This document shows positions 4,099-64,000 of a DNA stretch of 64,000 bases, piece by piece. Source of the stretch: Zootoca vivipara (lineage: Eukaryota); the NCBI RefSeq assembly GCF_963506605.1, contig NC_083288.1, positions 25,730,001-25,794,000 on the forward strand. The letters are read 5' to 3'. Both the position numbers and the translations under genes were made by a program. Position 1 is the first letter of the stretch. Every line of letters starts with the position of its first letter. The notes below the pieces were generated by a model. The model was not told the DNA's origin. It saw nothing but the letters and a program-made list of their open reading frames with translations, and made no database searches.

Positions 4099-4183
4099 CT
4101 TCCGTGCTCCAAACAACTCCTGGCCAGACCGAAACCAAGAAGAACCCCATGCAAAAACAGCAGGGGCTGGGGATGGGCCCCAT
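4099..4183 (-). CDS. ERBB2: ERBB2 coding exon 1 (signal peptide MGPIPSPCCFCMGFFLVSVWPGVVWSTE+G); remainder of the gene lies beyond position 1
   Basis: 85-nt ATG-initiated exon with a hydrophobic signal peptide ending STE and a phase-1 GTAAGT donor, like human ERBB2 exon 1 (...STQ|V). Lies in a CpG-rich region, head-to-head with PGAP3 as in human, and is preceded by a HER2-like 6-codon uORF. Identity rests largely on synteny. Confidence 0.78.
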
Positions 4184-11458: not shown

Positions 11459-12059
11459 TGTGAAATGGCAGGTGGAGCTACATGAAACTCTATGCATGAC
11501 GGGTGTGCATGTGTGGCTGCATACATACTAAAGCACATTCAAAGCACATTTCCCCCTCTCAAAGAATTCTGGACACTGCAGTTTGCTGGGAACTGTAATT
11601 CTGTGGTAGGTAAACCACAGTGCCCAGAATTCTTTTAGGCAAATAATGTGCTTCAAAGGTAGTGTGCAGACTGCCAGTGTGTGTACATGTTGCTTACACC
11701 GATGTGCATTGGAGGGAAGCTATATATCTGTTCCCACAGCCCAAGATTGAACTTCTAGAGACCCAGAGGAGAGGAGTGATCATTCAAGAAACCTGCACCG
11801 AACAAAGGAATTTTTGAAGGGCAAAAATAAGGGCAATAATATAGGGACTGGGTTTTTTTGTTTCTTTTTTTAAAGGAAAATTGGGACAGCTGGAAGAGAT
11901 TTTAAAAAGGTAATTAGAGATGACAATACTGCTTGTAAGTGGACGAGACACGATTGTAAGCGCTTGAAGGGGAGGCAGAGATGGGGATTCTTCTCTCTGC
12001 TTCTAAATGGAAGGGGAAATTTCGCTCAATAGTTTCTCAAGCCTTGAAGTAGAACAAAG

Positions 12060-12081
12060 AACTACATCTCCCACAATCCCC
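12060..12081 (+). promoter_or_regulatory. ZNF143/Staf-binding (SBS)-like motif in the PGAP3 CpG-island promoter
   Basis: aACTACAtcTCCCAcAATccc matches ACTACAnnTCCCAnAAT about 140 nt upstream of the PGAP3 ATG; ETS-like ttccgg also nearby. Confidence 0.55.
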
Positions 12082-12204
12082 TGCCCTAGCCACCAAGGCG
12101 GAACCTTTGCGCGTGCGGCTCGGGTTTCCCCCAGCTGCTTAAAACAAAGGGCCGGTTCCGGTTCCCAAAGCAGAAGTGGCGCTTGCAGCCGCCCGGCAGG
12201 CGGG

Positions 12205-12394
12205 ATGGCGGCTCGGACCGCGCTCCTACTGCTGCTGGGGGTGGCGGGCGCCGGCCTGGCCCCCGCCCAGGCCTCGCGGGGGGACCGGGAGCCCGTCTAC
12301 CGAGAATGCCTGACGCATTGCGAGAAGCGCAACTGCTCCGGGCCCGGGCTGCGGCACTTCCGCTCCCACCAGCCGCTCTACATGAGCCTCACAG
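12205..12394 (+). CDS. PGAP3: PGAP3 exon 1 of 8 (gene CDS span 12205-22875, 322 aa; post-GPI attachment to proteins phospholipase 3, Per1 family)
   Basis: [46 protein letters not shown]...QPLYMSLT: signal peptide plus the [10 protein letters not shown] motif; 190 nt, phase-1 GT donor; CpG island. Confidence 0.95.
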
Positions 12395-12973
12395 GTACTG
12401 CAAGGCCCCCGGCCGAGGGAGGGCCACGCCCACCGCCTAGGACGAGGCGCAAGGCGCATAGCCACGCCCACAAATGACTGTGCCCTCCCAGTGTTTCCCC
12501 CATAGGACGGCTTGGTGGCACCGCCTACTCGCCCTCTCGACCAATTCCTGGCGCTCTTTCCCGCTGCCCTCTGTGGGAGGGGGTTAATCGCGGACAGTAG
12601 CGTCTGAGCATGTGCAGAGTGTATTTTCCAATTAAATTGGCAATGGTTTTGGGGTGTAGTGCCGATCTGATGTTACCCCCCCTGCCCCTCTTAACTGTGC
12701 AGTCCTACTCAGAAGTAAGCCTCACTGAGTTGAATTTGCACATAGGGTTGCAGCCTGGGGCTCTAGAGCAGCGAGGCTGCGCACACAGCTGTTGCACTGC
12801 TGCATCGTTATTTGCAAGCAGGACTGTGCTATGCCCCAAAAAGGGCTGCTGGGGCAGCTGCTCCGTCTCTCTCCCTGCTTCAGGCCTTGCGAGCTGTCTC
12901 TTGTTTATTATTGTTGTTTTACTTATTTAGGCTGTTCATATCTCATCCTGAATTAGGGAGAGTAGCCGTTCCT

Positions 12974-15385: not shown

Positions 15386-15721
15386 CTGCCCGAGAGAGAA
15401 AGAAAGAGCTTGAAACTTACCAGATAGTTGGTAGTAACTTTGAACCCTCCTGGGATGGGATTTTGTTTTGTAGTGGAGGTTTCTACAAAAGTGGGTCACC
15501 TGACATCATTGTGATGTTAAGTGAGTGACCTGTGGGAGTAGCCCTCCAAGGGTGGTGGTGGTGGTGGGGAGCCCAGGATCTGGCCCACTGGCCAAATCCA
15601 GTTCCCCACCATTGCCTCAAACCGTCCTGAAAGAGCATGTATACCTTCTCATTTCTGGTTGATGACATATTTTTTTCCCCTTCTTCTTCTCCCTCCCTTG
15701 TTTTCCCACCCGACCCCTCAG

Positions 15722-15874
15722 TGGCCCTTTTCCCGCTTCCTGTTTTTCCAGGAGCCTGCTTCTGCCTTTGCTTCGTTCCTTAACGGACTTGCCAATTTAG
15801 TGATGCTGAACAGATATAAAGCTGCTGTCCCCCGTTCTTCTCCCATGTACCATACCTGCATTGCCTTTGCTTGG
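15722..15874 (+). CDS. PGAP3: PGAP3 exon 3
   Basis: [22 protein letters not shown]...YHTCIAFAW, 153 nt, AG/GTAAGT. Confidence 0.95.
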
Positions 15875-16296
15875 GTAAGTCATTCTGGACGGTTAATTTC
15901 TCACCACGGCAAGATGGGTGCCTTAGCTTCCTTCTCGTCTTTTCAAAGAGGTGGGAAACATGGAGAACAGAAAAGACAAGGAAGGCTTCCTGTTGCTTGA
16001 GATCTTGATGGGAAGGAAGGGGGGGGAGGACACGACAGGTCATCCCCTACAAGAGGAGTCACAGAAACACACGGTGTTCTGCTCCTCAGTCCAGGCTGTC
16101 TCAAAAAATGCAGAGCAAAGTAAGGAAGTAAGGAGGGCATCTCCCATGAGGAACAAACTCGAGCCATAGTAGAGTGCAATGTGTTTCCAGTGGCATTGTG
16201 GGTATTTGGACAAAGGTTTGCTGAATTATGTGATATTTTCCTCTGTGCTTTTTTTTAAGGGTTATGTTTTGGCACAATGCTTATAGTGTTGGTTTC

Positions 16297-16320
16297 TGTT
16301 ATAGGCATTCCAAGGTCATG

Positions 16321-16389
<69 letters not shown>

Positions 16390-16959
16390 TTTGTACCCCG
16401 CCCATCCAGCTGGGTCTCCCCAGCCACTCTGGGCAGCTTCCAGCAAAGATTAAAATACAATAAAATGTCACAGATTAAAAACTTCCCTAAACAGGGCTGC
16501 CTTCAGATGTTTTCCATACATATATATATATGTACATAAATGTACAAAGCAAACACGTACATGTCTGAAATAGTACAAGAGAACAATCCTGAAGCCCAAA
16601 TTGACCTCAGATGGAAAAAGCTTTCCAATTGTCTTTGGACTGTAGGGGCTTACACATCCCTGTAAATACAGTCTGGCAAGGATCTGATAAGCTGAGCACA
16701 CTATCAATATGTGATTCAAGAACTAAGTATTTACCATCTCAAAGGAATGGCCAGGCTACCCAGAAAAGGCAATCAGATAAGACATTATCAAGTATACTGG
16801 CAGACAGGAGAGAAGCAACACTCTCAAATTTCTGCTGGGGACCACCTCTTTCTGTGATGTATGTATGATGATTTGGGGTGGTGGTGGTCTTGAGCTACAG
16901 GGTAGGCAGTTTTAAGAGCTTTCACATCTATGTTCTGGGTTCCTCCTCCCTCCTGCTTG

Positions 16960-17017
<58 letters not shown>

Positions 17018-17188
17018 CGCACCCTGTTGCAACAGTTTAATAAAGAACAGGCTTACTAGCTGCTTTGCTTCTCAATATTCTCTGGTTTGGCCTGTTATTT
17101 TCTCCTACCAATAGAGAACCTACATAAGGACTCTATACGGGCTCTTGGGTACCCCATAAGGGGAAAGGAGCAGTTTTTTCTTACATCA
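16297..17188 (+). mobile_element. Solo LTR (ERV-like) carrying (TA)n, an L2-tail insertion and (GT)n(GA)n
   Basis: TG...CA termini, 5-bp TSD GTTTC, AATAAA after accctgttgcaacag; related to the 26070 element. Confidence 0.65.
16323..16384. repeat. (TA)n microsatellite
   Basis: About 30 units seen directly. Confidence 0.95.
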
Positions 17189-17569
17189 GTTTCTATCTAG
17201 GCTTTTTCTTCTACTCTGCAGACAAATTGTGTTTTGATTCAGAAGCAGTTTGAGGGAAAGGGTGGGATAGAATTGATAGATGATGATAATAACAGATAGC
17301 ATGTATCTAGGACTTTTTGAGCGTTTCACATACAGTATTATTGCAGCAGTCCAAAAGACTAAAGAAGCATGATTCCTCTAATGTTAAAGATGGGGTGGGA
17401 CTTGCTTCTGGGTTTGCTGATTTAAGTACCGCTTATCCCGGTTATCCCAGAATGGCTCGTTTTTATTACTTCTGTGGTAGAAGCTGCTTTTAACAACCTA
17501 ACCTCATAGATAGAATGTGGTATTTTCAGGATAACCATTTCTTTCCCTGCTCCCTCACTCCCCCTGCAG

Positions 17570-17632
17570 GTTTCTTTAAATGCATGGTTCTGGTCTACAG
17601 TTTTTCATACTCGAGAAACGAATCTAACTGAG
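17570..17632 (+). CDS. PGAP3: PGAP3 exon 4
   Basis: [21 protein letters not shown] (CREST-superfamily SxxFH motif), 63 nt, AG/GTGAG. Confidence 0.95.
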
Positions 17633-17731
17633 GTGAGCAATTTTGCTCTCGTATCATGAAAATTGTTGGTATGGGGCCCGAGGGAATTTTGAAGGCATGG
17701 CAAAAACCTCTCTAGTGGGTTAAAAACAAAT

Positions 17732-18091
17732 AAAGGTAAAGGTAAAGGGGCCCCTGACCATCAGGTCCAGTCGTGTCCGACTCTGGGGTTGTGGCGCTCA
17801 TCTTGCTCTATAGGCCGAGGGAGCCGGCGTTTGTCCGCAGACAGCTTCCGGGTCATGTGGCCAGCATGACAAAGCTGCTTTTGGCGAACCAGAGCAGCAC
17901 ACGGAAACGCCGTTTACCTTCCCGCCGGAGCGGTCCCTATTTATCTACTTGCACTTTGATGTGCTTTCGAACTGCTAGGTGGGCAGGAGCTGGGACCGAG
18001 CAACAGGAGCTCACCCCGTTGCAGGGATTCGAACCGCCGACCTTCTGATCAGCAAGCCCTAGACTCTGTGATTTAACTCACAGCGCCACCT
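17732..18091 (-). mobile_element. Sauria SINE
   Basis: (AAAGGT)n tail on the left (ACCTTT on minus), tRNA-like head with GGTTCGAATCC B-box on minus. Confidence 0.88.
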
Positions 18092-18564
18092 AAAAAAACA
18101 AATAGATAAGGTAAATGGTAGAAAAAAGGAAGTTATGTGAACCCCAGGTAAATAGTGCAGCCACCATGACAGCATAATCCTAACTATGTTTACTCCGAAG
18201 TAAATCCTATTGAATTCATTGGGGGTTCATCCCAGGGAAGTGAGGTTAGGATTCTATCCTGAGACTTGGTTTCAGATATGTGTGCTCAGGATCATCATCT
18301 CGTCAAGGTGTTTTTGAGGTCGGATAGGAGGACAGCTATCACCAGGAAGAACCTTCCCTGTTGGGTGTTAAAAATACTACTAGTAGGCTTCTGAGTATTT
18401 GCAGGCCACAATCCCAGGGGAAAGAGAGAAAACTTTCAATGCAGTTCCATGTTACTGGAGAAAAGCCATGAATAAACATGAATACCACAAGGATTTTCTA
18501 AAGAGAACGCGTAGCACTGAATGAGAACTGGCCCCGATTTCTAACGACATTTCTCTTCCCACAG

Positions 18565-18626
18565 AAAATGGATTATTTCTGTGCATCAGCCGTCATCCTT
18601 CACTCTGTCTACCTGTGTTGCGTCCG
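18565..18626 (+). CDS. PGAP3: PGAP3 exon 5
   Basis: [20 protein letters not shown](R), 62 nt, AG/GTGAGT. Confidence 0.95.
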
Positions 18627-19383
18627 GTGAGTTTCTCTCCTCCTTAAGAACATAAGGAGAGCCTTGCAGCTGGAAAAGACCAAAGGCCCATCCCGTTCAG
18701 TGTTCTGTTATCCCACAGTGGCTAAGCAGACCGATGTGGTTGGCACAAGCCCAGTAGCACTTCCCTACTTGCAGTTTGTATCTAATCCCCTTCCCAGGCG
18801 GCTTCTGTTGGTCACCATCTTCCGGTGACAAGCTTTACCACTTGCCCTGCGAGCATATACTTTTTGTCTGTCCTGCCTCTCCCACTTTTCAACTTCACTG
18901 GTTGAAATGTTATGGTGGGGTGGGAAAACTTTTTGGGGCTCCACGGGCCAGGTCTTTATCAGCCTTGCCCACCTGTCGAAATCCCTTGCGTATCTTTGCC
19001 AGTATCCCCAGGCTCCCCCTTTAAGCCCCCGAGCTGGGAGGTTTAGGAGGGAGAGCGCAGAGAAACTCGCAAAGGCTTCAAAGCAGCTCCCACACTCCCA
19101 GTTCATTCCTCCAGAGCTGTTGGGAGCAGCTCATGTTTCCCTTTTTAAGGGAGTGGGTGAGTGGCAGCAGCAGAGAGGAGTCTCCCCTGACCACTCACAG
19201 CTCCCATGTTTAGCTTTTATTCAACAACTGGGCATCTGCAAAAGGACAGGTCGAAACCGCAAGAGGAAATGTGTGCGGACAGGATATGTGCAGATAGAGG
19301 AAGAGCAACCCAAGGACAAAGCAAAGGAACAGCAAGTAAGGAGAGCCTTCAGCACCATCTCTCTTTTTTTCCTTTTCTTTCAG

Positions 19384-19520
19384 GACTCTGGGTCTGAAAC
19401 GGCCAGCCTTTGCCACCGCCATTGGGATCTTCCTGCTCCTCTTCCTAGCCTGCCATGTGTCGTATCTGACGCTCGTGCGCTTTGACTATGGTTACAATAT
19501 GGTTGCCAATGTGGTAATAG
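19384..19520 (+). CDS. PGAP3: PGAP3 exon 6
   Basis: [45 protein letters not shown](G), 137 nt. Confidence 0.95.
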
Positions 19521-19811
19521 GTGAGGGCGGTGGAGCAATGTTCTTCCCCTGCGGCAGGGGTTGGTTGGTATGGAGGTGTAGCCCAGCAGATAACCTTTGT
19601 ATGGCCTTCTCCACTTACGCCAGGTCAAGGTCTCTCATCTGGGCAGCCAGAACCTCCATACACACTGCCCAGGCTTGTGCACCAGGGAGGTCACTTTAGT
19701 GCCACCAATGCAGCAGTTTGACTTCACCCCCGGAGGCGCACTCCATTTTCTCTTGAGACAGGCAGATGTCAACTTGTAACTTGCTAAGAGCATTATGTAG
19801 CTACACCCTTT

Positions 19812-19857
<46 letters not shown>

Positions 19858-19866
19858 AAAATAGCT

Positions 19867-19998
19867 AAATTCCTTCCAGTAGCACCTTAGAGGCCAACTA
19901 AGTTTATCATTGGTATGAGCTTTCGTGTGCATGCTACTGGAAGGAATTTTTTTTATTTTGTTTCGACTACGCCAGACCAACACAGCTACCTACTTGTA
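19867..19998. mobile_element. Penelope-like element remnant with inverted terminal segment
   Basis: aaattccttccagtagca...tgctactggaaggaattt inversion; flanking direct repeat accaaaatagct. Confidence 0.55.
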
Positions 19999-20098
19999 AC
20001 CAAAATAGCTGTTAGCATAACTTGGAGACTGCACCAAATTACTAGAACATATCTCCCTTACTCCTTCCCTGCACTCCCAGAGCGTTTGTAGTATAGAG

Positions 20099-20234
20099 CA
20101 GTGTTTCCCAACCTTGTGCCTCCAGATGTTTTGAGACTACAATTCCCATCATCCCTAGCTAGCAAGACCAGTGGTCAGGAATGATGGGAATTGTAGTCTG
20201 AAAACAGCTGGAGGCACAAGGTTGGGAAACACTG
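20099..20234. mobile_element. 136-bp palindromic hAT MITE
   Basis: TIR CAGTGTTTCCCAACC, 8-bp TSD GTATAGAG. Confidence 0.88.
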
Positions 20235-20709
20235 GTATAGAGCACCAGGACCCTCAGGGCAGGTTCCCTGGGATCAACCAGCAAGAAAAGGGCACCTCAG
20301 TTATGGTTGTTCAGCATTATAGAGGCAAAGAGAGAGCAGGTCTGTAGATCCGTAGCGCCATGATTTCCCACAACAGTGCAAAACCTTGTGTTGTTACATA
20401 TTTGCCCAGAGCTTCCTCCCTCTGACTTCTGGCTCCATCAGGGCTTGGAAGCAGAGTCACCACTTGCAGCTCCCCAGATCTTTCTAGTTCCCTCCATACT
20501 TTCTCAGTGGATGATTCTGGGGGATGTATGCATGGGGACAGGATATTGCTGGCACTCCTTGGGATTTGGTGCTGAGGAGCAAGGGGTCTGGGGCCCAGGG
20601 CTGCTAGTGCCTCTGTTGCATCGCCATGTGCGTAACATATCTAGGTTCCTGCCCCACTGTGACTACTACCAGGCATGAAGCGCCGTCCTCTTTCTGCCGT
20701 ACCTTGCAG

Positions 20710-20914
20710 GCCTCCTCAACCTCCTCTGGTGGCTGGGTTGGTGCATGAGGAACCAACAACGCCTGCCGTACGTCTGGAAGTGTGTGGCGGTTGTGCTTCT
20801 TCTGCAAGCCTTGGCCCTCCTGGAGCTCCTGGACTTCCCCCCGCTGCTCTGGGTCTTCGATGCCCATGCCATCTGGCACATCAGCACCATCCCCGTCAAT
20901 ATCCTTTTCTACAG
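20710..20914 (+). CDS. PGAP3: PGAP3 exon 7
   Basis: [20 protein letters not shown]...[31 protein letters not shown] (HxxWH motif), 205 nt. Confidence 0.95.
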
Positions 20915-21403
20915 GTCAGCCAAGTTTGCTTGCCTTTGCGGGTGGGCCTTCTGCTGCCATTGGTTCTCTGTGATTGGTTGTCAGGGCACTGCTTGGACTC
21001 CCAACTCCCATCAGCCCCAGCCAGCATGGCGGAGGCTCGGGGATGATGGGAGTCGTGTGCTCCAGCAGCATCTTGAGTGACACACACACCACTGATCTAT
21101 TTGTTTTGTATCCCGCCTGTCATCATATTCAGGGAAGTTCACAGCACAAAAATACAAGATGAAAACACAACATGATAAAAACAAAAACCAATGCCACCAC
21201 CTCCCACTTCACTCCCACAAACACATTTGATATAGGCCTGGTTGAAGGGGAACTTCTTCACCTGGTGCTTAAAGGTGTATGTATAATGAAGGCGCCAGGC
21301 AAACTTCCCTGGGCAGAACATTCCACAAACGGGGAGCCACCACAGAAAAGGCCTGTTTTTGTGTTGCAACCAAAAATTGTCATGGAAGAGGCATGATCTG
21401 CAG

Positions 21404-31312: not shown

Positions 31313-31742
31313 TCAGGCTGTTTTCTGCGCATGGATGAAGAAGATCCCTTGCACGTCATCCACGCCAATCTTCAGGCTCGGCGGCATGACGTAGGAGCGG
31401 AAGCTGCGGGTGCGATAGCCGCTCTTGGCGAAGGATTCCTTGACATCTGCCTCGCTGATGGGCACGACCGACAGCTTGGCTTCTCCAGCCAAATAGAAGG
31501 ACTCGTCCAAAGCCCCGATCATGAGGAAGTGGCCACCGGGCTTGAGAAGCGTCGTGACATTCTGCAGGGCCCGGTCGAAACTCGGCCTGTCAGGGCTCAC
31601 GGCTTCCAGGCAGAAAGCAGAGACCAAAGCGTCGGCTGGTTGGCTGAGAGAGGAACCTAGAGGTTTGGCCTGGTGGACATCGATGGGAAGGATCCTTCTG
31701 AGTTTCTTCTTCAGCTTTTGCTCTTTTTCCTTCCACGGTTCC
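31313..31742 (-). CDS. PNMT: PNMT exon 3 (terminal)
   Basis: EPWKEKEQKL...ADALVSAFCLEAVSPD...LKPGGH...GALDESFYLAGEAKL...GVDDVQGIFFIHAQKTA*; residues equivalent to human E185, E219 and D267 are kept. Confidence 0.95.
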
Positions 31743-43924: not shown

Positions 43925-44309
43925 CTGGTCTCGGTTTGAAGCAGACAAGCAGCGCAGAGAAACTTACCGCCAGCAACGGGAAGCCCGGGTCATAGTGCAG
44001 AGGTCTCCATGGGGCATCCTTCGCTTGGGTCTGCTGGGCCATCCTCTGACCTCCTACCACCTGCCCTACCAGCGGCCTTTGCCCCTGCCCATCTTCACAC
44101 CGACCAAGCTAAGCGCCAGGGAGCTCACCCCAACTCCCTCAGAGTCTGTGGAGTCCTTGCCGGCGTCCGGCGTGTGTCTTGATAAGAAATCTGTGGCCGA
44201 GATCACCAAGGAGCTTCCCCTGGTCATCCAGCCCACCTGCCCCGACTTCAAGAAAGGCTTGCCCCGCTCCTTGTCCCGTTCCATGTCTCAGGATGCCCAG
44301 AGAGGCTGA
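43925..44309 (+). CDS. TCAP: TCAP exon 2 (terminal)
   Basis: WSRFEADKQRRETYRQQ...VQRSPW...YHLPYQRPLPLPIFTP...VAEITKELP...RSLSRSMSQDAQRG*; hallmark telethonin C-terminus. Confidence 0.96.
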
Positions 44310-54378: not shown

Positions 54379-54540
54379 GCCCTGGATAGCTCAGTTGGTA
54401 GAGCATGAGACTCTTAAACTCAGGGTGGTGGGTTCGAGCCCCATGTTGGGCGAAAGATTCCTGCTTTTGCGGGGGGTTGTACTAGATGACCCTCGTGGTC
54501 CCCCTTGCAACTTGACAGTTCTGTTATTCTGTTATTCTGT
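54379..54540 (+). mobile_element. tRNA-Lys(CTT)-derived SINE with CR1-like 3' tail
   Basis: Head TAGCTCAGTTGGTAGAGCATGAGACTCTTAAACTCAGGGTGGTGGGTTCGAGCCCCATGTTGGGCG is close to tRNA-Lys-CTT; followed by gggttgtactagatgaccctc...(ttctgtta)n CR1-type tail. Confidence 0.78.
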
Positions 54541-55575: not shown

Positions 55576-56724
55576 CATATTTCAAAAAGTGAAAATCCGA
55601 ACTTCTCCAAATTAAGTTTTGGGTTTGTTTGTTTTTGCAACATCTCAATTTTTTTTGAAGTTTTTGAGCAATTTTAAAGGAAAATCAAAATCAACACTTC
55701 CAAAAATAAAAATAATATCCACACTTCCAACATGGGTTGCCATGATTTTCGGTGGTTTTTGGAAATTCAACCCGGATGCTATTTCTGACGGACAAATCCT
55801 GGATATATTGCATCCCTAAAATACTCCAAATAAGCAAACACACATAAATGAAAGGTAGGAGCAGGCAAGCTTCTCTCGAAACAAAAGAGAGGGATACCGC
55901 CCGCACCTTTTGCTTTGCATCTCTGGTTCTACAACTGCTAAACATGTACAGTGCACTTGCTTTTCAAAGTGAAAGCTGGGAACCTGGGGCTTATGCTTCA
56001 TCCAGAGGTGGGGTAACTCCCCCCCCCCCATTTGTATGCCTATGTTGTGTACATTAAACACAGAGTAGGGTTGCCATACATCCAGATTTTCCCGTACATA
56101 GTCAGAATACGGCAGCTGGAAACAGTGTCCGGGTAGAAACCAGTTCAATATCTGGGAAAATCTCTAAGGTGCTTTATTTTGTTTCAACTATGACAGACCA
56201 ACATGCCTACCTACCTGTAACACCCTGAGAATGTTTGATATATTATTGCGTTTTTAATATTCTGTTGGGAGCCGCCCAGAGTGGCTTGGGCAACCCAGCC
56301 AGATGGGTGGGGTATTAATAATAATAATAATTATTATTATTAGTCTTGAGCAGCAAAGCCAAAATAAAGGCACTGTATCAAGGCAGTGTGGTAAAGCCCC
56401 ACATTTTTGGCCATGGAGAACATTTCAGCTCTGGGTTTTGGTTTATGTTTTTCCATCCAAATGTTCACCTCTTGTTTTATAGAAAACTATTGACTGAGAG
56501 TCATGAGAAACGATGCTATTTGTTAACCCATGACATTAATACAGAAGAAAAAGGGTAAAGCATGAACGGGAAATGGGGGCGCAAGTTCTTTGTGCCAAAG
56601 GGAGTTTCCAACAGGTTCAGTAGTCTACTCTGAATATGCGGACTCCATTCGTTCTTCCATCCAAAGGTAGAGTTGTGCCTGCCTCTTTCTTCAGTGTCTG
56701 CCTCTCTTCCACCTTCTCCTCGGC

Positions 56725-56910
56725 TTAATCCCCGTCTACGCCCTCCTCCATCTCTTCCTGAGCTTCGTTGCTCATTGTGACCAAGACAGGACCAGGTGTT
56801 GTAGGTCCTCCATCGCTGGAAGATCCCTCATCCTCTTCGTCCTCCACGGGGTAGAAGTGCCGAGCCGCTGACAGGAATTCATCTCCCACATCAAGGAGAA
56901 GCAGCCTGTC
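56725..56910 (-). CDS. Melanoregulin-like exon 5 (terminal)
   Basis: DRLLLLDVGDEFLSAARHFYPVEDEEDEGSSSDGG...EEMEEGVDGD*, cf. MREG DRLIALDAAEEFFKLARRTYP; total CDS 681 nt in frame. Confidence 0.9.
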   Translation of the reverse strand, partial: DRLLLLDVGDEFLSAARHFYPVEDEEDEGSSSDGGPTTPGPVLVTMSNEAQEEMEEGVDGD

Positions 56911-58321
56911 CTAGGGAAGGAAGGGTGACAAAAATAAAGGGATCTAAGACACCTAAGAAGTAGAAAATTTAAAAATGATGACCACACCAAGCCAGCAGTA
57001 AATATTGGATTCAATTGCATTTTACCTCACAGTAATTGTGAGGTAAAATAATGGAAGAGAGAGTGGCAATCCTTGGGTCACCGGAGAGGTCAGGGATCCC
57101 CCAAATCTTTAAGCAAACAAAAATACTGATTTTTGCCAACTGCCTCTACCCCACTTTTAAAAGTCAGGGGATGTGAGGGAAACACATATAAAATAAACCG
57201 AACAAATGGTCCCTGTTTGGGGCAGGGGCCAAAACACTTCAAGGAGCCCCTGTTACGAGGGAGATTCCCAGGTTCTTAGTAGCACAGGCCTAGTACTGAA
57301 TGGGTAGGGTTGGAGTATGTAATTAACTACCAAGACACAAGTATCTGGTAATAAAATGTAATATTAGATTTATTAAGGGAAGTCTGAGTCTAAAAGCATT
57401 CAAAAGGAGATAAAGTGATTTATTGTTGTTCCGCTCTGTTTTCTGGCCTAGGAGACATCCACCCTTTGTTGTAGAAAAATAGTTCCCATTAAACTATTTG
57501 GCCTTCTTTAAAGAAGAAGAAGAAGAAACAACAACAACAACAACAGGAGCTGGCACACCCTTAATTTAATTACCGTATTTTTCCGTCTATAAGACACCCC
57601 CATGTATAAGACGCCCCCTATTTTGGGGGACTCGGATTTTAAAAAATGGGGGGAGATGACCACATACCCAGAGGTCTCAGGGCGGTTCACAAAACAAAAT
57701 CAAAATATAAAACCACAAAAATATAATCAAAATTAAAACAACCTAATAATCCCCCCCCCCCCGAATGAAATCAACCAAAGGCCAATGAAATCAACCAAAG
57801 TCCTGTTCCAGACAAAGGAAAATATTCAACTGAGATCTTTCTCCCTCAAAGTGAGAGAACTGACTAACCAAGCAAACGCCACGTATTTTTAGCCATTAAC
57901 AAGGCTACCTGCAGAAGGGGGAGAATTTCAAAAGGATTGCTTTGTCCTGAAAGCATGACCCTCTATGTCGAACAAAAGACTTGGCATCACACTCCCAACA
58001 CTAGGAGGGGAAACATCTCCACTTAACTTGGAGGACAAAGGAAAAAATATTTGGGAGAGGGTGGCAAGGTGTTAAAGGATTTGTAAGGCCAATCAGCACA
58101 TTAGAAGGAGTCGATTCACAGAGGCTTCATGACATTGGAAGCAGTTATTTGAAAACCACAATCAGGCTACCTGGAGGAGCTTGCTTTCCACTCCTACCTT
58201 CATGGTAGCTGCTTCCATGCCACGGTGGGTCAGGCCCACAGCTTCTGTCCCTGCGGTGATGTACTGCACAGACAAGCACATGCCCCAACAGAAGTTTCTA
58301 CCGAATCCTCCCTCTACTCAC

Positions 58322-58488
58322 AATGACAAAGAGGTATCTCTCGGGTGGACCACCACGATGCCGGCCAAAAATGGTTGTCTGCTCAGCCAGGGCAGTGTGG
58401 ATCCTGCGGGCCTCTTGAGGATTGTGAAGGGATTCATATGAGGTGCTGGATGTGACAGTGAGGAGCCCATCTGCTTCAGCTTTGAATC
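58322..58488 (-). CDS. Melanoregulin-like exon 4
   Basis: FKAEADGLLTVTSSTSYESLHNPQEARRIHTALAEQTTIFGRHRGGPPERYLFVI, cf. MREG FQKEADSLLSVT...LAEETNIF...ERYLFVV; 167 nt, TAG/GTGAGT. Confidence 0.92.
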
Positions 58489-58514
58489 CTACATTGGGAA
58501 GAGATCATTTATGC

Positions 58515-58650
58515 CAGGCTTCCTCAACCTCAGCCCTCCAGACGTTTTTGGCCTACAACTCCCATGACCCCTAGCTAGCAGGACCAGTGGTCAGGGATGA
58601 TGGGAATTGTAGTCTCAAAACATCTGGAGGGCTGAGGTTGAGGAAGCCTG
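58515..58650. mobile_element. 136-bp palindromic hAT MITE (MREG-like intron 3)
   Basis: TIR CAGGCTTCCTCAACCTCAGCCCTCCAGA, TSD ATTTATGC. Confidence 0.88.
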
Positions 58651-58918
58651 ATTTATGCCCAAATCCACTCCAAACACCAACTCAATAAATAATAAACAAG
58701 AGCAGCCCTGTTGGATAGGAACGGAATCCAGTATCCTGCTCTCACAGTGGCCAAGGATAGGTAAATAATAGTCTTCACCCCTCCAAAGTCAACAGGGAGA
58801 AGGCTCTAGTAGTTCTTAGTAGTGGAACACTTGAGAGAAATGAAAACGAGTAAGGATAACAGCTCTCTTAACACTCTCCACTTTGGTCGGTGGTGGAAAT
58901 CTCCCAAGGACACCATAC

Positions 58919-59009
58919 CCAAGACTTCCAGGATTTGCTTCCATCGGTCCTTCATCTTCCGACGGATCTGCCGGTGAGCGATGATGTCAAAGCTCAAGCG
59001 TCGGTAGTC
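58919..59009 (-). CDS. Melanoregulin-like exon 3
   Basis: DYRRLSFDIIAHRQIRRKMKDRWKQILEVL(G), cf. MREG [31 protein letters not shown]; 91 nt. Confidence 0.92.
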
Positions 59010-59293
59010 CTTTGTCAGGATACAGGAGACCATCAAAAGAATGAACCACTAAGCTACGCTTTTCAGCAAAACGCCCACCATCATGCAAACTATGTGTGGA
59101 GAAAGGCCTATATATTACAGGGGTCTTTAAAGGGCTGCTTTGTGTGTGCACCTACATGTGCATTAACACACTGCACCCCACTGAGGCCCCTATTGCTGAA
59201 GATCATGCCACCCAGGCAGATTGCTCCTACGATGCATCACTTTTCTTGCTCCCATCCATGGATGCAAACAGCAGAAGCTCATCCGTATGTGGC

Positions 59294-59429
59294 CAGGCAC
59301 CCCCAAACTGCGGCCCTCCAGATGTTTTGGCCTACAACTCCCATGATCCCTAGCTAGCATGACCAGTGGTCAGGGAAGATGGGAATTGTAGTCCAAAACA
59401 TCTGGAGGGCCGAAGTTTGGGGATGCCTG
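59294..59429. mobile_element. 136-bp palindromic hAT MITE (MREG-like intron 2)
   Basis: TIR CAGGCACCCCCAAAC/GTTTGGGGATGCCTG; flanking duplication gtatgtggc. Confidence 0.85.
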
Positions 59430-59743
59430 GTATGTGGCAGACAGTTAAGGGTTACATCACTGCTCTTTCCGATGCTATTTTTTGTCAGGAAAGGGGTTGG
59501 ATTCCCCGAAGAAGTTTCTTTTGGCCCAATATAACTCAATGTAAGCCATTAGCCCATCCCACCTGCATAGCCCTATGCTGGTTTGTATTTGTTGGTCACA
59601 CTAGAGTGCGGCAGAAACTAGAAACTGGCTTATATTATTTTAATGCTTACATCAATGCCTCACTGTGTTTGTGGGCACACATACACAATAATTCTTGTTC
59701 ATGGACATCATTGTCTGGCACTTACTCCTCCAGATGAACCAAC

Positions 59744-60190
59744 CATAGAATCATAGAGTTGGAAGAGACCACAAGGGCCATCCAGTCCAACCCCCTGCCA
59801 AGCAGGAAACGCCATCAAAGCATTCTTGACATATGCCTGTCAAGCCTCTGCTAAAGACCTCCAAAGAAGGAGACTCCACCACACTCCTTGGTAGCAAATT
59901 CCACTGCCTAACAGCTCTTACTGTCAGGAAGTTCTTCCTAATGTTTAGGTGGAATCTTCTTTCTTGAAGTTTGAATCCATTGCTCCGTGTCCGCTTCTCT
60001 GGAGCAGCAGAAAACAACCTTTCTCCCTCCTCTATATGACATCCTTTTATATATTTGAACATGGCTATCATATCACCCCTTAACCTTCTCTTCTCCAGGC
60101 TAAACATACCCAGCTCCCTAAGCCATTCCTCATAAGGCATCGTTTCCAGGCCTTTGACCATTTTGGTTGCCCTCCTCTGGAGACGTTCCA
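59744..60190 (-). mobile_element. CR1 LINE 3' end
   Basis: LERLQRRATKMVKGLETMPYEEWLRELGMFSLEKRRLRGDMI...VRQWNLLP peptide plus ctctatgattctatg tail. Confidence 0.9.
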
Positions 60191-60266
60191 GACTGCACGT
60201 GGGCAAATGTCTTGCAATTAAATTCTCCCCCAAACAAAAAATATTCCGTGCGCAAGGACAACATAC

Positions 60267-60426
60267 CTCTGATCCCCGGCGCGTTTTTGACCTTTTCTCC
60301 AGCAACATGTGGAGTTTATGATCATCATCCCGTTCCACGTGAGTCTTGTCCATTGGTTCATTCCATAAGTTGACGGCCTCCAATTCCCGTCGCTTCTGCA
60401 ACTTGTTGAAATACTGAAGCGTATCG
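60267..60426 (-). CDS. Melanoregulin-like exon 2
   Basis: DTLQYFNKLQKRRELEAVNLWNEPMDKTHVERDDDHKLHMLLEKRSKTRRGSE, cf. MREG NLWSMPHDVSHTEADDDRTLYNLI; 160 nt, CAG/GTATGT. Confidence 0.9.
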
Positions 60427-60508
60427 CTGCAACAGAAAGGTTACAAACAAACAGCATCACAATGGCTGCTCTTCAAACCAAGTAGAAAATGGAGTTCTTG
60501 GTAAAGTC

Positions 60509-61079
60509 CAGAAATAAACAGTAAATTGCAAGAACTCAGGCCAAAAGAAAAATGGATTTCAAATATATCTTCACAAGGTTTTATTTGTGTGATGAAGAGT
60601 TCAAATAGGAATCAATCCCAGTATAGTAGGCAAAATAAAAATAAATTCCAGTAAAAATCAGGACAAGGCCCTGTTTTGACAATTCTTCATCAGCTGGAAT
60701 ATTGAAAAATTAGAAATGAATCTTAAAATAATTCTCCTTATAACAAAAAATCATTCAGATCTCTAAACATAAAGTCTTATCATATGTAAAAGACAGAGAA
60801 TATGCTTAAATGAACATTACAGGTATATCTATGAATAACTAACCTTACATCAAAATTACATTCTGTTTTCTAAATAAAGAGTTGAATTGCTTATAATGTA
60901 CAAAGATAGCTTGTCCATGTTTTAAATGATAAACCATCTTAAAATAATTATCCTTACATCAGGAATACATGTAATTTTCTAAAGACGAAGTTATATCACT
61001 CATAATAAACCTTGTGAAGATATATTTGAAATCCATTTTTCTTTTGGCCTGAGTTCTTGCAATTTACTGTCTATTTCTG
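60509..61079 (-). mobile_element. Penelope-like insertion with ~72-bp terminal inverted repeats and a hammerhead-like motif
   Basis: IR cagaaataaacagtaaattgcaagaactcagg...cacaaggttt and its reverse complement at about 61007-61079; direct repeat gctcttcaaaccaag on both sides; AT-rich interior. Confidence 0.6.
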
Positions 61080-62238
61080 CTCTTCAAACCAAGACAGGAC
61101 TCCTAGGTCTACTCCTCACCAAGTAACTCAGTGGTAGAGCACATGCTCATTCTCCAACATCTGCAGGTAGGGCTGCGATTGCCCCTGGAGAACCTTTGCT
61201 GGTCATTGTCAACCATACTGTGCTACATGGACCAATGGTCTGGATCAGTAGAAGGCAGCTTCCTAGGTACAGTACTGTATCTGATATCTGGGCTTTATCA
61301 CTTTGGATTGAAAGTGGGAGCTCACATGGGCAAATGCTTCTCACATACCGTAACCTCCTCCATTTCTCTGATGAAAAGAGGGAAGTCCAATACTATTTTT
61401 CTAGGAAAAGAAGTGCTGGAACTCACCACGAACACCTCCTTCATTCTCTTAGAATGCAATGGTGCCCACCTGAGAGGTGCTGGCAAGTTCCAGCTGAAAA
61501 AAAGCCCTCGGAACATTCTATGCAATGCATCTCTTTAGCCCGGTAGATGCCACATTGGGACTGGAAACCTTGGATTTGAGCCTTGCTCCGTACATTTATT
61601 CACAACAACTTTTCAAACTAAAGAGTCACCCTCAATTAAAGTAGACCAATTAATTAAAAGCTGATTAATAGAAGCATTTAATGTTGCAGCCCTAGAATTA
61701 AAGTGTGCATATAATTCAAGAGGGCTTTTGTAAAGGCACACCCAAAGATTGTGAATCAAACAAAGCACTGTACATTGAAACAGTAGCTAAACTGTAAAAG
61801 CGAGAAAGGCGGAATCCTTTCATGATGAATCCTGTAAGTTACATTATAATCAAAACACCATTGCAGCAGGAGGAGGAGGTTTTTAGCAGACTTGGGGGAA
61901 TGCTAAGATTTGCAAAAGTAGAACTGAAATATTTAGACACAGAACTCTAATGGAGGAAGGAAATGCCATCTAGTTGTTGGGAGTGGGGATGAAATGGAAT
62001 ATCCTGGGAAAGGGTGGGGTTCGTCTGGCCAACTGGGGCCCTAAACAGCAATGCTCTGTACTTCCCACTTCATGAGAGATGGATTCCGGAACTGCCAGCT
62101 TCCGTACAGCATCACTTTGAAAGCCGAACACACTTACCTTAATTTATGCCGTTGTCTGCCATTGCTTATTATAACTTATTATAAATTTGGCGGAAGCTCG
62201 GGGCTTGCTAAATGAAAAAGCTAACTTGTAACACATAC

Positions 62239-62315
62239 CCAACGACCAATGGATTCTTCTCCAGGTCTTCTTCTATATGGCAACAGCAGCAGCAAACTTT
62301 GTACCAGAAATTCAT
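62239..62315 (-). CDS. Melanoregulin-like (MREG paralog) exon 1 of 5 (CDS span 56725-62315, 226 aa)
   Basis: MNFWYKVCCCCCHIEEDLEKNPLVV(G): Cys cluster and EKxPLV as in MREG (…TVCCCC…EKEPLV); 77 nt, phase-2 GTATGT donor. Confidence 0.85.
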
Positions 62316-64000
62316 CTCTCTCCCTCTCTCTCTCTCAAAGTATAATAAATGCTAAGACAGGCTGGAGACCAGCATATTGAAACGCGATAAAATAGAAGAT
62401 GGAGAGAAAATAGATAGGGTAGATCCAAGTCCAAGTAGTAAAGGAATTCCACTTGGGAAGGCAAAGGAGTTCTATGAATTCTCTTTAAATATCATCTGCA
62501 CATCATAAGCAGTGATCATGTGAGATTCTCCCCCTTCCGCCATAGCTTAAGGCCTTTAAAACAAACTGCAGAGTGTGAAATAGTGTATTGTATGTTGCCT
62601 CTGTGTTTATATGGAATGAAAAGTAGGTTTGTTTTTCAAATCTTCAAGAAAGACCACAGGATTAGATGAGTTGCGAGGCACTGTGGAACCACATGAAGCC
62701 AAAGGATTAGAGGCACAGAAAGGCAGAACAGAACCCAGGCCTTGCTGTGGTTATCCACTGGGAGAAATTCTGCAGTCTATTCTTTTTGCAACCAGCCCTT
62801 CCTCCAAGCAGCTCAGGGTAGCATAAATGGAGCCATCTCAGTTTATCCTCACAGCTACTTTGCAAGTGTCGTTACAGTGGGCAAGACAGTGGCTTGCACC
62901 CAAAGAGCTTCTTAATCGCCAAGTAGGTTGTTTGAGCCTAGCAGGGCTGGTCCTGTCATTAGGCAGAGTAAGGTGACTGCTTCTGGCGGCATATGCTAAG
63001 AACCAGTGGTGCCCCATAGCTCTTCTTCCTTTGTTGTGCATCTTGCCCTCCCCCTTAGGGTCTGTGCTTTGCCCTGTTATTAGTACTGAAGTAGGATTCA
63101 GTGGCCAGCCCAGTTGGCTACTAGAGGTGGAAAGAGCATGTTGTATGGGCTATTTTGCCCGAAGCAACATGTCTTGGTCCAGCCTTGGAGTTAGACTTGG
63201 GCCACATTCCACCTTAAAATACTATAACAGTTTAAAAACAGTCATGGCTTCCCAATTGCCAGAGTGGATTAACCCACAATCGATCCACAGTGACAGGGAC
63301 CTCTGGGAACTGTAGCTCTGGGAGAGGAATAGGGGTCCACTAACAGCTCTGTGTTTCATGAAGTCTCTGGAGGAAGTGATGGCTGTTTAGAGTAGCCTTA
63401 CTCTGCCCAGGGTTAATAGAATAACCACATACCCATTTGCAATTCTTAGCCTTTTCCATTTAATTTTATGTCCCCACTTCTGCTATAAAACTCGTTGCGT
63501 GACCTTGGGTCGTGCATGGATTTGTTTCCACTGGAAGGCCAACATCCCATCTTGTGCTAAAAAGGAGTATTCTGCTCATGTGGACAGTAGATCTCCAAAG
63601 CTGCAACCCTGCAGAAGTTCACCACTTGGCTGGCACACTAGCTGTGCAAGTAGACCGCACCCGTGAGCAGTTTCTAAATGTAAGTTGCTAACTGGTGTTA
63701 TCAAGATCAGAGTCTAATATAATTCTAATATAATTTTCCATCTGTAAAATGCCGAACAGTAAATCTTCCCAGGATTGCTCCTAGGGCAAAAGCAACAGAA
63801 CACTTTGAAATTCCCAGGCAAATGATCTGGGGAGGAATCCCAATGAACACACGGAGATTTGCCCCTGGGAAAGCAGGGTTGTGATCATGCTGCCAAAACG
63901 CCAGTAAACTGTGTAATTGTTTTATTCCGCTTTCCAGATAATTACTGTCTCCCAAAGCAGCTCACATAAGTTAAAAGAGAGAAGGAGGAGGAGGAGAAGG

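What the first reader, a model, noticed from the sequence alone, without database searches (positions are those of the whole stretch)
56725..62315. Intact 5-exon melanoregulin-like gene: a probable second MREG (ohnolog) absent from the mammalian ERBB2 locus
Seen: five minus-strand exons (77+160+91+167+186 = 681 nt) with canonical GT-AG sites and consistent phases give a 226-aa ORF. By eye it aligns end to end with melanoregulin (Cys cluster, EKxPLV, NLWxxPxDxxH-E-DDD, RQxRRxxxxRWKxILExLGF, EADxLLxVT, LAExTxIF, ERYLFVxDRL, ARxxYP) but is clearly divergent. Known: mammalian MREG (dilute suppressor) acts in melanosome/lysosome-related organelle transport and maps to human 2q35 near ERBB4/IKZF2, which is paralogous to the 17q12 ERBB2/IKZF3 block; human has STARD3, not an MREG gene, next to TCAP. 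Inference: this is the 2R-WGD sister of MREG, kept in squamates and lost in mammals. It is a candidate pigment-organelle trafficking factor in animals with several chromatophore types. The ORF track misses it because the exons are short.
Basis: partly seen in the sequence, partly recalled or inferred. Interest (0 to 1): 0.85.

Follow-up and report, generated by a model that had tools for sequence, protein, structure and literature searches.

The report
Annotated lizard melanoregulin gene beside TCAP
The five exons are a real, intact melanoregulin-family gene of the common lizard that public annotation already lists; it belongs to an old gene line shared by sharks, fishes, frogs, turtles, crocodiles and lizards, and is probably a sister copy of the mammalian coat-colour gene MREG.

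Summary
Five minus-strand exons (62315-62239, 60426-60267, 59009-58919, 58488-58322, 56910-56725) are open in the stated phases, and all four introns are GT-AG. Exons 2-5 cover the Pfam MREG profile in order. Exon by exon they match the 226-aa NCBI protein "melanoregulin [Zootoca vivipara]" (P0024), so the gene is already annotated.

A spliced RNA contig confirms the exon 4-5 junction, and another supports exon 3-4. Three deep RNA-seq runs show no reads on the exons.

The gene lies next to TCAP, PNMT and PGAP3, the block that flanks ERBB2 in human.

A 44-protein tree follows the species tree from sharks to squamates and includes zebrafish Mreg and Xenopus melanoregulin. So the gene is not a squamate speciality. 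No bird or mammal member turned up.

P0024 is about 43% identical to mouse MREG (PDB 6CMY). Column signatures suggest mouse MREG branched off before the jawed-vertebrate gene line, which fits an old paralog. I could not get a canonical MREG by reference, so there is no tree test, and I could not check whether this genome has a second MREG.

This scan had only this same note on this stretch. The gene itself is ordinary; the evolutionary reading is of modest interest.

The parts
62239..62315 (-). Coding exon 1 (77 nt). ATG at 62315-62313. Encodes residues 1-25, including the Cys cluster C8-C12, plus 2 nt of Gly26. GT donor at 62238-62237. A (GA)n run lies directly upstream of the ATG.
   Evidence: No RNA coverage was seen.
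60267..60426 (-). Coding exon 2 (160 nt), residues 26-79. Pfam MREG profile 2-42. AG acceptor and GT donor.
   Evidence: No RNA coverage was seen.
58919..59009 (-). Coding exon 3 (91 nt), residues 80-109 plus 1 nt of Gly110. Pfam MREG profile 43-72.
   Evidence: The exon 3-4 joint (58487|58918, CT..AC on the + strand) is in an X1 contig at depth 14.6, with only 28 nt on the shorter side.
58322..58488 (-). Coding exon 4 (167 nt), residues 110-165. Pfam MREG profile 74-127.
   Evidence: The exon 4-5 joint (56909|58321) is in a 762-nt X1 contig at depth 23.4, with 169 nt on the shorter side.
56725..56910 (-). Coding exon 5 (186 nt including the TAA stop at 56727-56725), residues 166-226. It holds the end of the MREG domain (profile 128-148) and an acidic tail.
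   Evidence: The RNA contig carries one coding difference, at 56830, which is synonymous (GAT to GAC).
56317..56724 (-). 3' UTR of at least about 400 nt. The lower bound is approximate.
   Evidence: The X1 contig covers 56480-56909 and has 163 more letters beyond 56480 (table 8). Sequence.
43995..44309 (+). Context: TCAP (telethonin) last exon, the nearest recognised neighbour gene.
   Evidence: Pfam PF09470, 111.5 bits, E 4.9e-32.
31313..31627 (-). Context: PNMT-family last exon.
   Evidence: Pfam PF01234, 88.5 bits.
15659..21080 (+). Context: PGAP3 (Per1 family) exons. An ORF at 12007-12477 looks like its first exon but has no Pfam hit.
   Evidence: Pfam PF04080 hits at 15659-16000 and 20745-21080.

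Best explanation
This is a functional, conserved protein-coding gene: the melanoregulin-family gene of Zootoca vivipara, already in RefSeq as 'melanoregulin' and called 'melanoregulin-like' in many other reptiles and frogs. It belongs to one gene line present across jawed vertebrates, which includes zebrafish Mreg (zgc:91968) and Xenopus melanoregulin. In the lizard it lies in the TCAP-PNMT-PGAP3(-ERBB2) block. It is most likely an ancient paralog of the mammalian MREG (dilute suppressor) gene, separated before the jawed-vertebrate radiation, plausibly in the 2R genome duplications. No bird or mammal member of this line was found.

Inferred mechanism, by homology and not shown here: a small helical protein is anchored to the cytosolic face of endolysosomal or pigment-organelle membranes through acylation of its N-terminal Cys cluster. 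Like mouse MREG, it would act as an adaptor that biases organelle movement or maturation, for example by coupling to dynein through RILP or by LC3-linked phagosome handling. The basic helix (RQIRRKMKDRWK) and the ERYLFV-DRL core are kept.
For: The gene model is intact with canonical splice sites. Pfam MREG scores 184.5 bits on the identical database protein and is tiled collinearly by the exons. A spliced RNA contig joins exons 4-5 and another supports exons 3-4; the only coding difference is synonymous. The family alignment has 33 invariant columns over 47 proteins from lamprey to lizard, which shows purifying selection. An ML tree of 44 proteins recovers the species tree: squamates 100/100, sauropsids 100/100, ray-fins 99/98. 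The window holds TCAP, PNMT and PGAP3. Mouse MREG (PDB 6CMY) is hit at E 4e-33 with about 43% identity. For paralogy: states shared by amphibian and sauropsid members (N48, P133, V/M173, G174, no K187) are absent from mouse, which has fish-like S48, A173, A174 and K187. R58, Y81 and Y127 are near-invariant in all 54 jawed-vertebrate members but are A, W, M in mouse and T, W, L in lamprey. Mouse MREG is no closer to amniote members than to coelacanth or chimaera: 117.9 and 135.2 bits against 150.1 and 144.8.
Against: No canonical MREG sequence could be fetched by reference, so no likelihood tree or AU test places mammalian MREG. The signature argument rests on one canonical sequence read by eye. 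I did not find any species that carries both gene types; only the '-like' names hint at that. Three true RNA-seq runs of the species gave zero depth on all exons, with about 6% of each run read. Exons 1 and 2 have no RNA support. The Foldseek match to 6CMY has probability 1.0 but a TM-score of only 0.25-0.30. The function is wholly inferred.
Confidence: 0.75

Rival explanations
1. There is only one gene, and it moved. This would be the true ortholog of mammalian MREG. The vertebrate ancestor had a single MREG beside TCAP/ERBB2, and in mammals (and birds) it relocated to the 2q35-type region and evolved fast.
For: No species with both types was shown here. All non-mammalian 'melanoregulin' entries recovered, including Swiss-Prot-named zebrafish Mreg, are of this type. 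NCBI calls the Zootoca and snake genes plain 'melanoregulin'.
Against: Mouse MREG lacks four of the five derived states shared by amphibian and sauropsid members and keeps fish-like states. It shares W81 with lamprey against Y in all 54 jawed-vertebrate members. Human MREG lies about 3 Mb from ERBB4/IKZF2, the known paralogous counterpart of ERBB2/IKZF3 (established knowledge). That placement is what duplication of a whole block predicts and would be an odd coincidence for a random move. Many reptile and frog entries are named '-like'.
Confidence: 0.15
2. It is an ancient paralog, but from a small-scale duplication in an early vertebrate rather than from the 2R genome duplications.
For: Nothing here dates the duplication beyond 'before the jawed-vertebrate crown'. 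Only one lamprey sequence is in hand, and it sits on a long branch.
Against: Both loci lie in the well-known ERBB/IKZF paralogous blocks: the window for this gene and established knowledge for human MREG.
Confidence: 0.08
3. It is a decaying or silent gene: an intact-looking ORF that is no longer used in this lizard.
For: Depth on the exons is zero in three deep RNA-seq runs. The squamate stem branch is long (0.29), and squamates have lost a C-terminal motif kept from sharks to crocodiles.
Against: The ORF is intact with all splice sites. A spliced transcript contig at depth 23 exists in another sample. Eleven squamate orthologs are 73-80% identical with the same invariant core.
Confidence: 0.02

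Closest known systems
Mouse/human melanoregulin (MREG, dilute suppressor dsu; PDB 6CMY)
   Same: Same Pfam family (PF15812). It aligns over residues 43-187 at E 4e-33. Both have an N-terminal Cys cluster, a basic RQ(I/V)RR..RW helix, the EAD.LL.VT block and the ERYL.V.DRL core. 6CMY is the top Foldseek hit.
   Different: Only about 43% identical. Different chromosomal neighbourhood: TCAP/PNMT/PGAP3 here, against PECR/XRCC5 near ERBB4/IKZF2 in human (established knowledge). The RRGSEGY motif is present here and replaced in mouse. The C-terminus is an acidic tail rather than the mammalian Pro-rich end. Gly2 is absent in the lizard. The structural overlay is poor (TM 0.25-0.30).
Zebrafish Mreg (MREG_DANRE, zgc:91968) and Xenopus 'melanoregulin'
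   Same: Same gene line in the tree, 44-55% identical to the lizard protein, with the same invariant core.
   Different: Basal fishes, frogs, turtles and crocodile carry a C-terminal DE[ED]x[FL][LM]xx[LS]L[ED] motif that all squamates (and derived teleosts such as zebrafish) lack. Fishes begin with Met-Gly; squamates begin with Met-Asp or Met-Asn.
'Melanoregulin-like' RefSeq genes of other squamates, turtles and crocodilians
   Same: Direct orthologs: 73-80% identity within squamates and 56-59% to turtles and crocodile. The squamate clade has 100/100 support.
   Different: Nothing of substance. The Zootoca copy has a few private changes (for example E40, L41, K63, I139) and the shortest tail.
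LAMTOR1 (p18, Ragulator anchor)
   Same: It is the nearest non-MREG clusters in the language-model feature search (scores 0.88-0.89). Like MREG it is a small, N-terminally lipidated adaptor on late endosomes and lysosomes (established knowledge).
   Different: No Pfam LAMTOR hit on this protein. This is a lead only and was not tested further.

Membership tests
Melanoregulin family (Pfam PF15812 MREG) | MREG domain above Pfam's gathering score, full length | tested here: met
   P0024, which is identical to the exon translations, scores 184.5 bits against a cut-off of 27 and covers profile 3-148 of 149. Exons 2-4 each pass the cut-off on their own.
Melanoregulin family (Pfam PF15812 MREG) | Significant sequence similarity to experimentally studied mouse MREG | tested here: met
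   phmmer against PDB 6CMY_A: E 4e-33, 117.9 bits, about 43% identity over 145 residues.
Melanoregulin family (Pfam PF15812 MREG) | N-terminal cysteine cluster (the acylation and membrane-anchor site in mouse MREG) | tested here: met
   CCCCC at residues 8-12 in exon 1, conserved in nearly all members. Acylation itself cannot be tested here.
Melanoregulin family (Pfam PF15812 MREG) | Same helical fold as the solved mouse structure | tested here: inconclusive
   The AF2 model has mean pLDDT 72 and seven helices. Foldseek's top hit is 6CMY (E 4.7e-5, prob 1.00), but TM is 0.25-0.30 and rmsd 16 A.
Melanoregulin family (Pfam PF15812 MREG) | Role in melanosome or lysosome-related organelle transport (RILP/dynein, LC3 binding) | not testable with these tools
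   Homology only. Skin transcriptome papers report 'mreg' in snake scales and frog melanophores (PMC11988092, PMC11640764) but do not say which paralog.
Canonical (mammalian-type, 2q35-type) MREG orthologs | Neighbourhood of PECR/TMEM169/XRCC5, near ERBB4/IKZF2 | tested here: not met
   The window holds TCAP, PNMT and PGAP3 instead.
Canonical (mammalian-type, 2q35-type) MREG orthologs | Nests with mammalian and avian MREG in a gene tree | not testable with these tools
   No canonical sequence could be obtained by reference. By-eye column signatures argue against nesting.
TCAP/ERBB2-linked melanoregulin line (fish mreg, 'melanoregulin-like') | Nests within the clade in the position its species predicts | tested here: met
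   ML tree: inside squamates (100/100) and inside sauropsids (100/100). All seven taxon groups are monophyletic.
TCAP/ERBB2-linked melanoregulin line (fish mreg, 'melanoregulin-like') | Same neighbourhood (TCAP/PGAP3/ERBB2) in other species | not tested
The only hint is that the X. tropicalis member lies on a 52,432,566-bp record, a length I recall as Chr10, the 17q-like chromosome (from memory).
TCAP/ERBB2-linked melanoregulin line (fish mreg, 'melanoregulin-like') | C-terminal DE[ED]x[FL][LM]xx[LS]L[ED] motif | tested here: not met
   The motif is present in sharks, basal ray-fins, lungfish, amphibians, turtles and crocodile, and absent in all 11 squamates including Zootoca. This is a lineage-specific loss and not a reason to exclude the gene.

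The most novel reading that the evidence does not exclude
Hidden paralogy with reciprocal loss. The 'mreg' of fishes, frogs and squamates (this gene, TCAP/ERBB2-linked) and the MREG of mammals and birds (ERBB4/IKZF2-linked) would be different 2R ohnologs. Zootoca and snakes would keep only this one, which NCBI names plain 'melanoregulin' there. Results from zebrafish, frog or reptile 'mreg' and from mouse dsu would then concern non-orthologous genes. The squamate copy has also shed a C-terminal acidic di-leucine-like motif that is kept from sharks to crocodiles.
Probability: 0.3. Interest if true: 0.5.

Novelty: already known. Interest (0 to 1): 0.27.

Why it matters
The gene itself is ordinary and already annotated. 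What could matter is bookkeeping. Suppose the fish, frog and reptile gene that is routinely labelled 'mreg' in pigment studies is a paralog, not the ortholog, of mouse and human MREG. Then functional inferences carried over from the mouse dilute-suppressor work to chromatophore biology need a caveat, and the family becomes a clean case of differential ohnolog loss in the ERBB/IKZF paralogous blocks. I found no paper that says this. It is a modest point for gene-family and pigment-cell specialists, not a surprise of wide reach.

Tried and rejected
1. phmmer with exon 4 against 1.84 billion representatives gave 19 hits, all of the TCAP/ERBB2-linked type and none canonical.

2. All three word-indexed homolog searches (gecko protein, 12-sequence profile, frog region 108-187) returned about 200 proteins. 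None was from a mammal or a bird and none was a canonical MREG. This is a sensitivity limit of the word index, because mouse MREG clearly exists in PDB.

3. The PDB chain 6cmy_A cannot be used as a reference in other tools. I did not type its letters into a script, so the tree that would include canonical MREG was left out.

5. The exons were never joined by me.

6. RNA runs X19-X21 showed only intronic repeats lighting up and zero reads on exons. This is not taken as evidence of silence, because the tissue is unknown and only about 6% of each run was read.

7. Paper searches for an MREG ohnolog, for MREG with TCAP/PGAP3, and for MREG with PECR in chicken were all blank. One broad search was uninformative. 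The structure paper PMC6170685 is not held, so conservation of the cholesterol-recognition motif was not tested.

8. Scan notes for PECR and ERBB4 in this genome gave nothing.

9. The metagenome scan was not used. It would at best give single mammalian exons.

Full report
**Observation**

A script that handled the exons one at a time found GT after exons 1-4 and AG before exons 2-5. It also found split codons GG|C and G|GA, both Gly.

Scanned separately against Pfam, exons 2, 3, 4 and 5 hit the melanoregulin model PF15812 at profile positions 2-42, 43-72, 74-127 and 128-148. This collinear tiling cannot be chance. Exon 1 carries the Cys cluster (CCCCC, residues 8-12).

**The gene is already annotated**

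A phmmer search with exon 4, followed by a homolog search, returned P0024, NCBI/UniRef 'melanoregulin [Zootoca vivipara]', 226 aa. The five exon peptides map onto it letter for letter at 1-25, 27-79, 80-109, 111-165 and 166-226, with Gly at 26 and 110.

The window therefore comes from the common lizard or a near-identical genome. P0024 scores 184.5 bits on Pfam MREG.

**Expression**

Three genuine RNA-seq runs of the same species label gave no reads on any exon. About 6% of each run was read, and all laid reads fell on intronic repeats.

A fourth data set (X1, Logan contigs) has two relevant pieces:
- A 762-nt contig at depth 23.4 runs through the 3' UTR and exon 5, then jumps 1411 nt exactly to exon 4 (56909|58321, CT..AC on the + strand).
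- A second piece joins exon 4 to exon 3 (58487|58918), though with only 28 nt on the shorter side.

So there is spliced RNA support for the last two junctions, strong for exons 4-5 and weaker for 3-4. Junctions 1-2 and 2-3 have no RNA support. The one coding difference in that contig (56830) is synonymous.

**Surroundings**

Pfam identifies these neighbours in the window:
- a telethonin (TCAP) last exon at 43995-44309 (+);
- a PNMT-family last exon at 31313-31627 (-);
- Per1/PGAP3 exons at 15659-21080 (+).

This is the gene block that flanks ERBB2 on human 17q12 (established knowledge). Another first-stage note places an ERBB2 leader near 4183; I did not test that. The window ends 1.7 kb upstream of the ATG, so the next gene on that side is unknown.

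**Relatives**

Three homolog searches gave about 200 proteins, all carrying PF15812:
- squamates, named 'melanoregulin-like' in Eublepharis, Hemicordylus, Elgaria, Sceloporus, Anolis sagrei, Varanus and Tiliqua, and 'melanoregulin' in Zootoca, Heteronotia and snakes;
- crocodilians and turtles;
- some 40 frogs, plus salamanders and a caecilian;
- lungfish and coelacanth;
- Polypterus, sturgeon, gar, bowfin and many teleosts, including zebrafish Mreg;
- sharks, rays and a chimaera.

A lamprey protein was also found. No bird and no mammal appeared.

An ML tree of 44 of these proteins, rooted on lamprey, reproduces the species tree:

| Group | Support (bootstrap / SH-aLRT) |
|---|---|
| cartilaginous fishes | 89/99 |
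| ray-fins | 99/98 |
| amphibians | 87/87 |
| crocodile + turtles | 96/88 |
| squamates | 100/100 |
| sauropsids | 100/100 |

The window's protein sits inside squamates, with 79% identity to Hemicordylus. This is one gene line shared across jawed vertebrates, not a squamate peculiarity. Thirty-three columns are invariant across 47 sequences, so the protein is under long-term constraint.

**Relation to mammalian MREG**

The only canonical MREG I could reach is mouse MREG in PDB entry 6CMY. P0024 hits it at E 4e-33, with about 62 identities in 145 aligned positions (43%). Scores of other members against the same chain are below:

| Member | Bits against 6CMY |
|---|---|
| Zootoca | 117.9 |
| crocodile | 135.2 |
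| X. tropicalis | 143.6 |
| chimaera | 144.8 |
| coelacanth | 150.1 |
| lamprey | 104.1 |

Mouse MREG is thus no closer to amniote members than to fish members.

I compared the printed mouse letters by eye with a per-column table of 54 members plus lamprey.

- Five states are shared by amphibian and sauropsid members against fishes: N48, P133, V/M173, G174 and loss of K187. Mouse has S48, T133, A173, A174 and K187, which is the fish-like state at four of the five.
- Three residues are near-invariant in all jawed-vertebrate members: R58, Y81 and Y127. They are A, W, M in mouse and T, W, L in lamprey.

Both patterns are what an ancient paralog predicts and not what an ortholog nested among tetrapods predicts. 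Human MREG lies about 3 Mb from ERBB4/IKZF2, the counterpart of ERBB2/IKZF3 (established knowledge). Together these give about 0.8 to paralogy, with 2R the most economical origin.

This is not a tree test. The PDB chain cannot be passed to other tools, and I did not type it into a script.

**What remains open**

- Whether this lizard also has a canonical MREG.
- Whether any species has both types.
- The tissue of expression.
- The function.

The naming pattern is suggestive only. Plain 'melanoregulin' in Zootoca and snakes could mean that no second gene is annotated there.

**Mechanism (inferred)**

The AF2 model is helical, with mean pLDDT 72 and the core at 85-95. Its best PDB match is mouse MREG (probability 1.0), but the geometric overlay is poor, with TM 0.25-0.30.

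By homology I expect an acyl-anchored adaptor on endolysosomal or pigment-organelle membranes. The Cys cluster, the basic helix and the ERYLFV-DRL core are kept.

Squamates differ from all other tetrapod members. They lack a C-terminal DE[ED]x[FL][LM]xx[LS]L[ED] motif that is conserved from sharks to crocodiles, and they sit on a long stem branch of 0.29.

**Literature**

I found no paper that discusses a second MREG or an MREG ohnolog. 'Melanoregulin-like' occurs only as a lake-trout QTL candidate (PMC7263693). Snake-scale and tree-frog skin studies report 'mreg' expression without saying which type they mean (PMC11988092, PMC11640764).

**Verdict**

- The family assignment is right.
- The gene is already annotated.
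- 'Kept in squamates' is too narrow.
- The ohnolog reading is likely but not proven here.
- Interest is low to modest.

Noticed in passing
window 54379-54452 (+): A tRNA-Lys(CTT)-like sequence. Rfam tRNA gives 38.7 bits (gathering score 29), and ARAGORN calls it. It is a single copy in the window and is followed by a 'gggggttgtactagatgaccctcgtggtccc' tail typical of reptile SINE/CR1 ends, so it may be a SINE head rather than a working tRNA gene.
   Followed up: partly
window 58511-58650, 59293-59430 (introns 3 and 2 of the gene) and 20107-20226 (PGAP3 region): Three copies of a palindromic MITE-like element of about 140 bp. They are 87-91% alike, and each matches its own reverse complement. 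They attract thousands of RNA-seq reads that run on into unrelated sequence, meaning transcripts from other copies in the genome.
   Followed up: partly
window 59745-60195 (-), intron 2: A CR1-like LINE 3' fragment (reverse-transcriptase tail) on the gene's strand. The 216-aa ORF at 59751-60401 in the ORF list is exon 2 read through its donor site into this element. It is an artefact, not an alternative product.
   Followed up: partly
proteins P0020-P0037 against P0033, P0035, P0042, P0094 and others: All 11 squamate orthologs, and derived teleosts such as zebrafish, pike and medaka, lack the C-terminal motif DE[ED]x[FL][LM]xx[LS]L[ED]. The motif is otherwise kept in sharks, basal ray-fins, lungfish, amphibians, turtles and crocodile. 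It looks like an acidic di-leucine-type sorting signal, but its function is unknown.
   Followed up: partly
window 62316-62342 (-), just upstream of the ATG: A (GA)n microsatellite ('gagagagagagagggagagag') abuts the start codon. The reads tool skipped 62309-62342 as a repeat, which may add to the lack of laid reads on exon 1.
   Followed up: no
model mad05bbd43aac: After mouse MREG, the next Foldseek hits are the C-terminal helical prodomain of plant and mammalian legumains (TMq 0.33-0.39, E 0.2-0.5). The language-model search puts LAMTOR1 clusters next to MREG clusters. Both are leads only.
   Followed up: no
P0018 (Amblyraja radiata 'melanoregulin-like, partial'): This skate entry sits as sister to the sawfish ortholog on a long branch (0.52). 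It looks like a divergent or mis-modelled ortholog, not a second shark paralog.
   Followed up: partly
window 43995-44309 (+) against 31313-31627 (-): The TCAP and PNMT last exons lie on opposite strands here, whereas both genes are on the same strand in human (from memory). This may be a small local inversion in the lizard.
   Followed up: no
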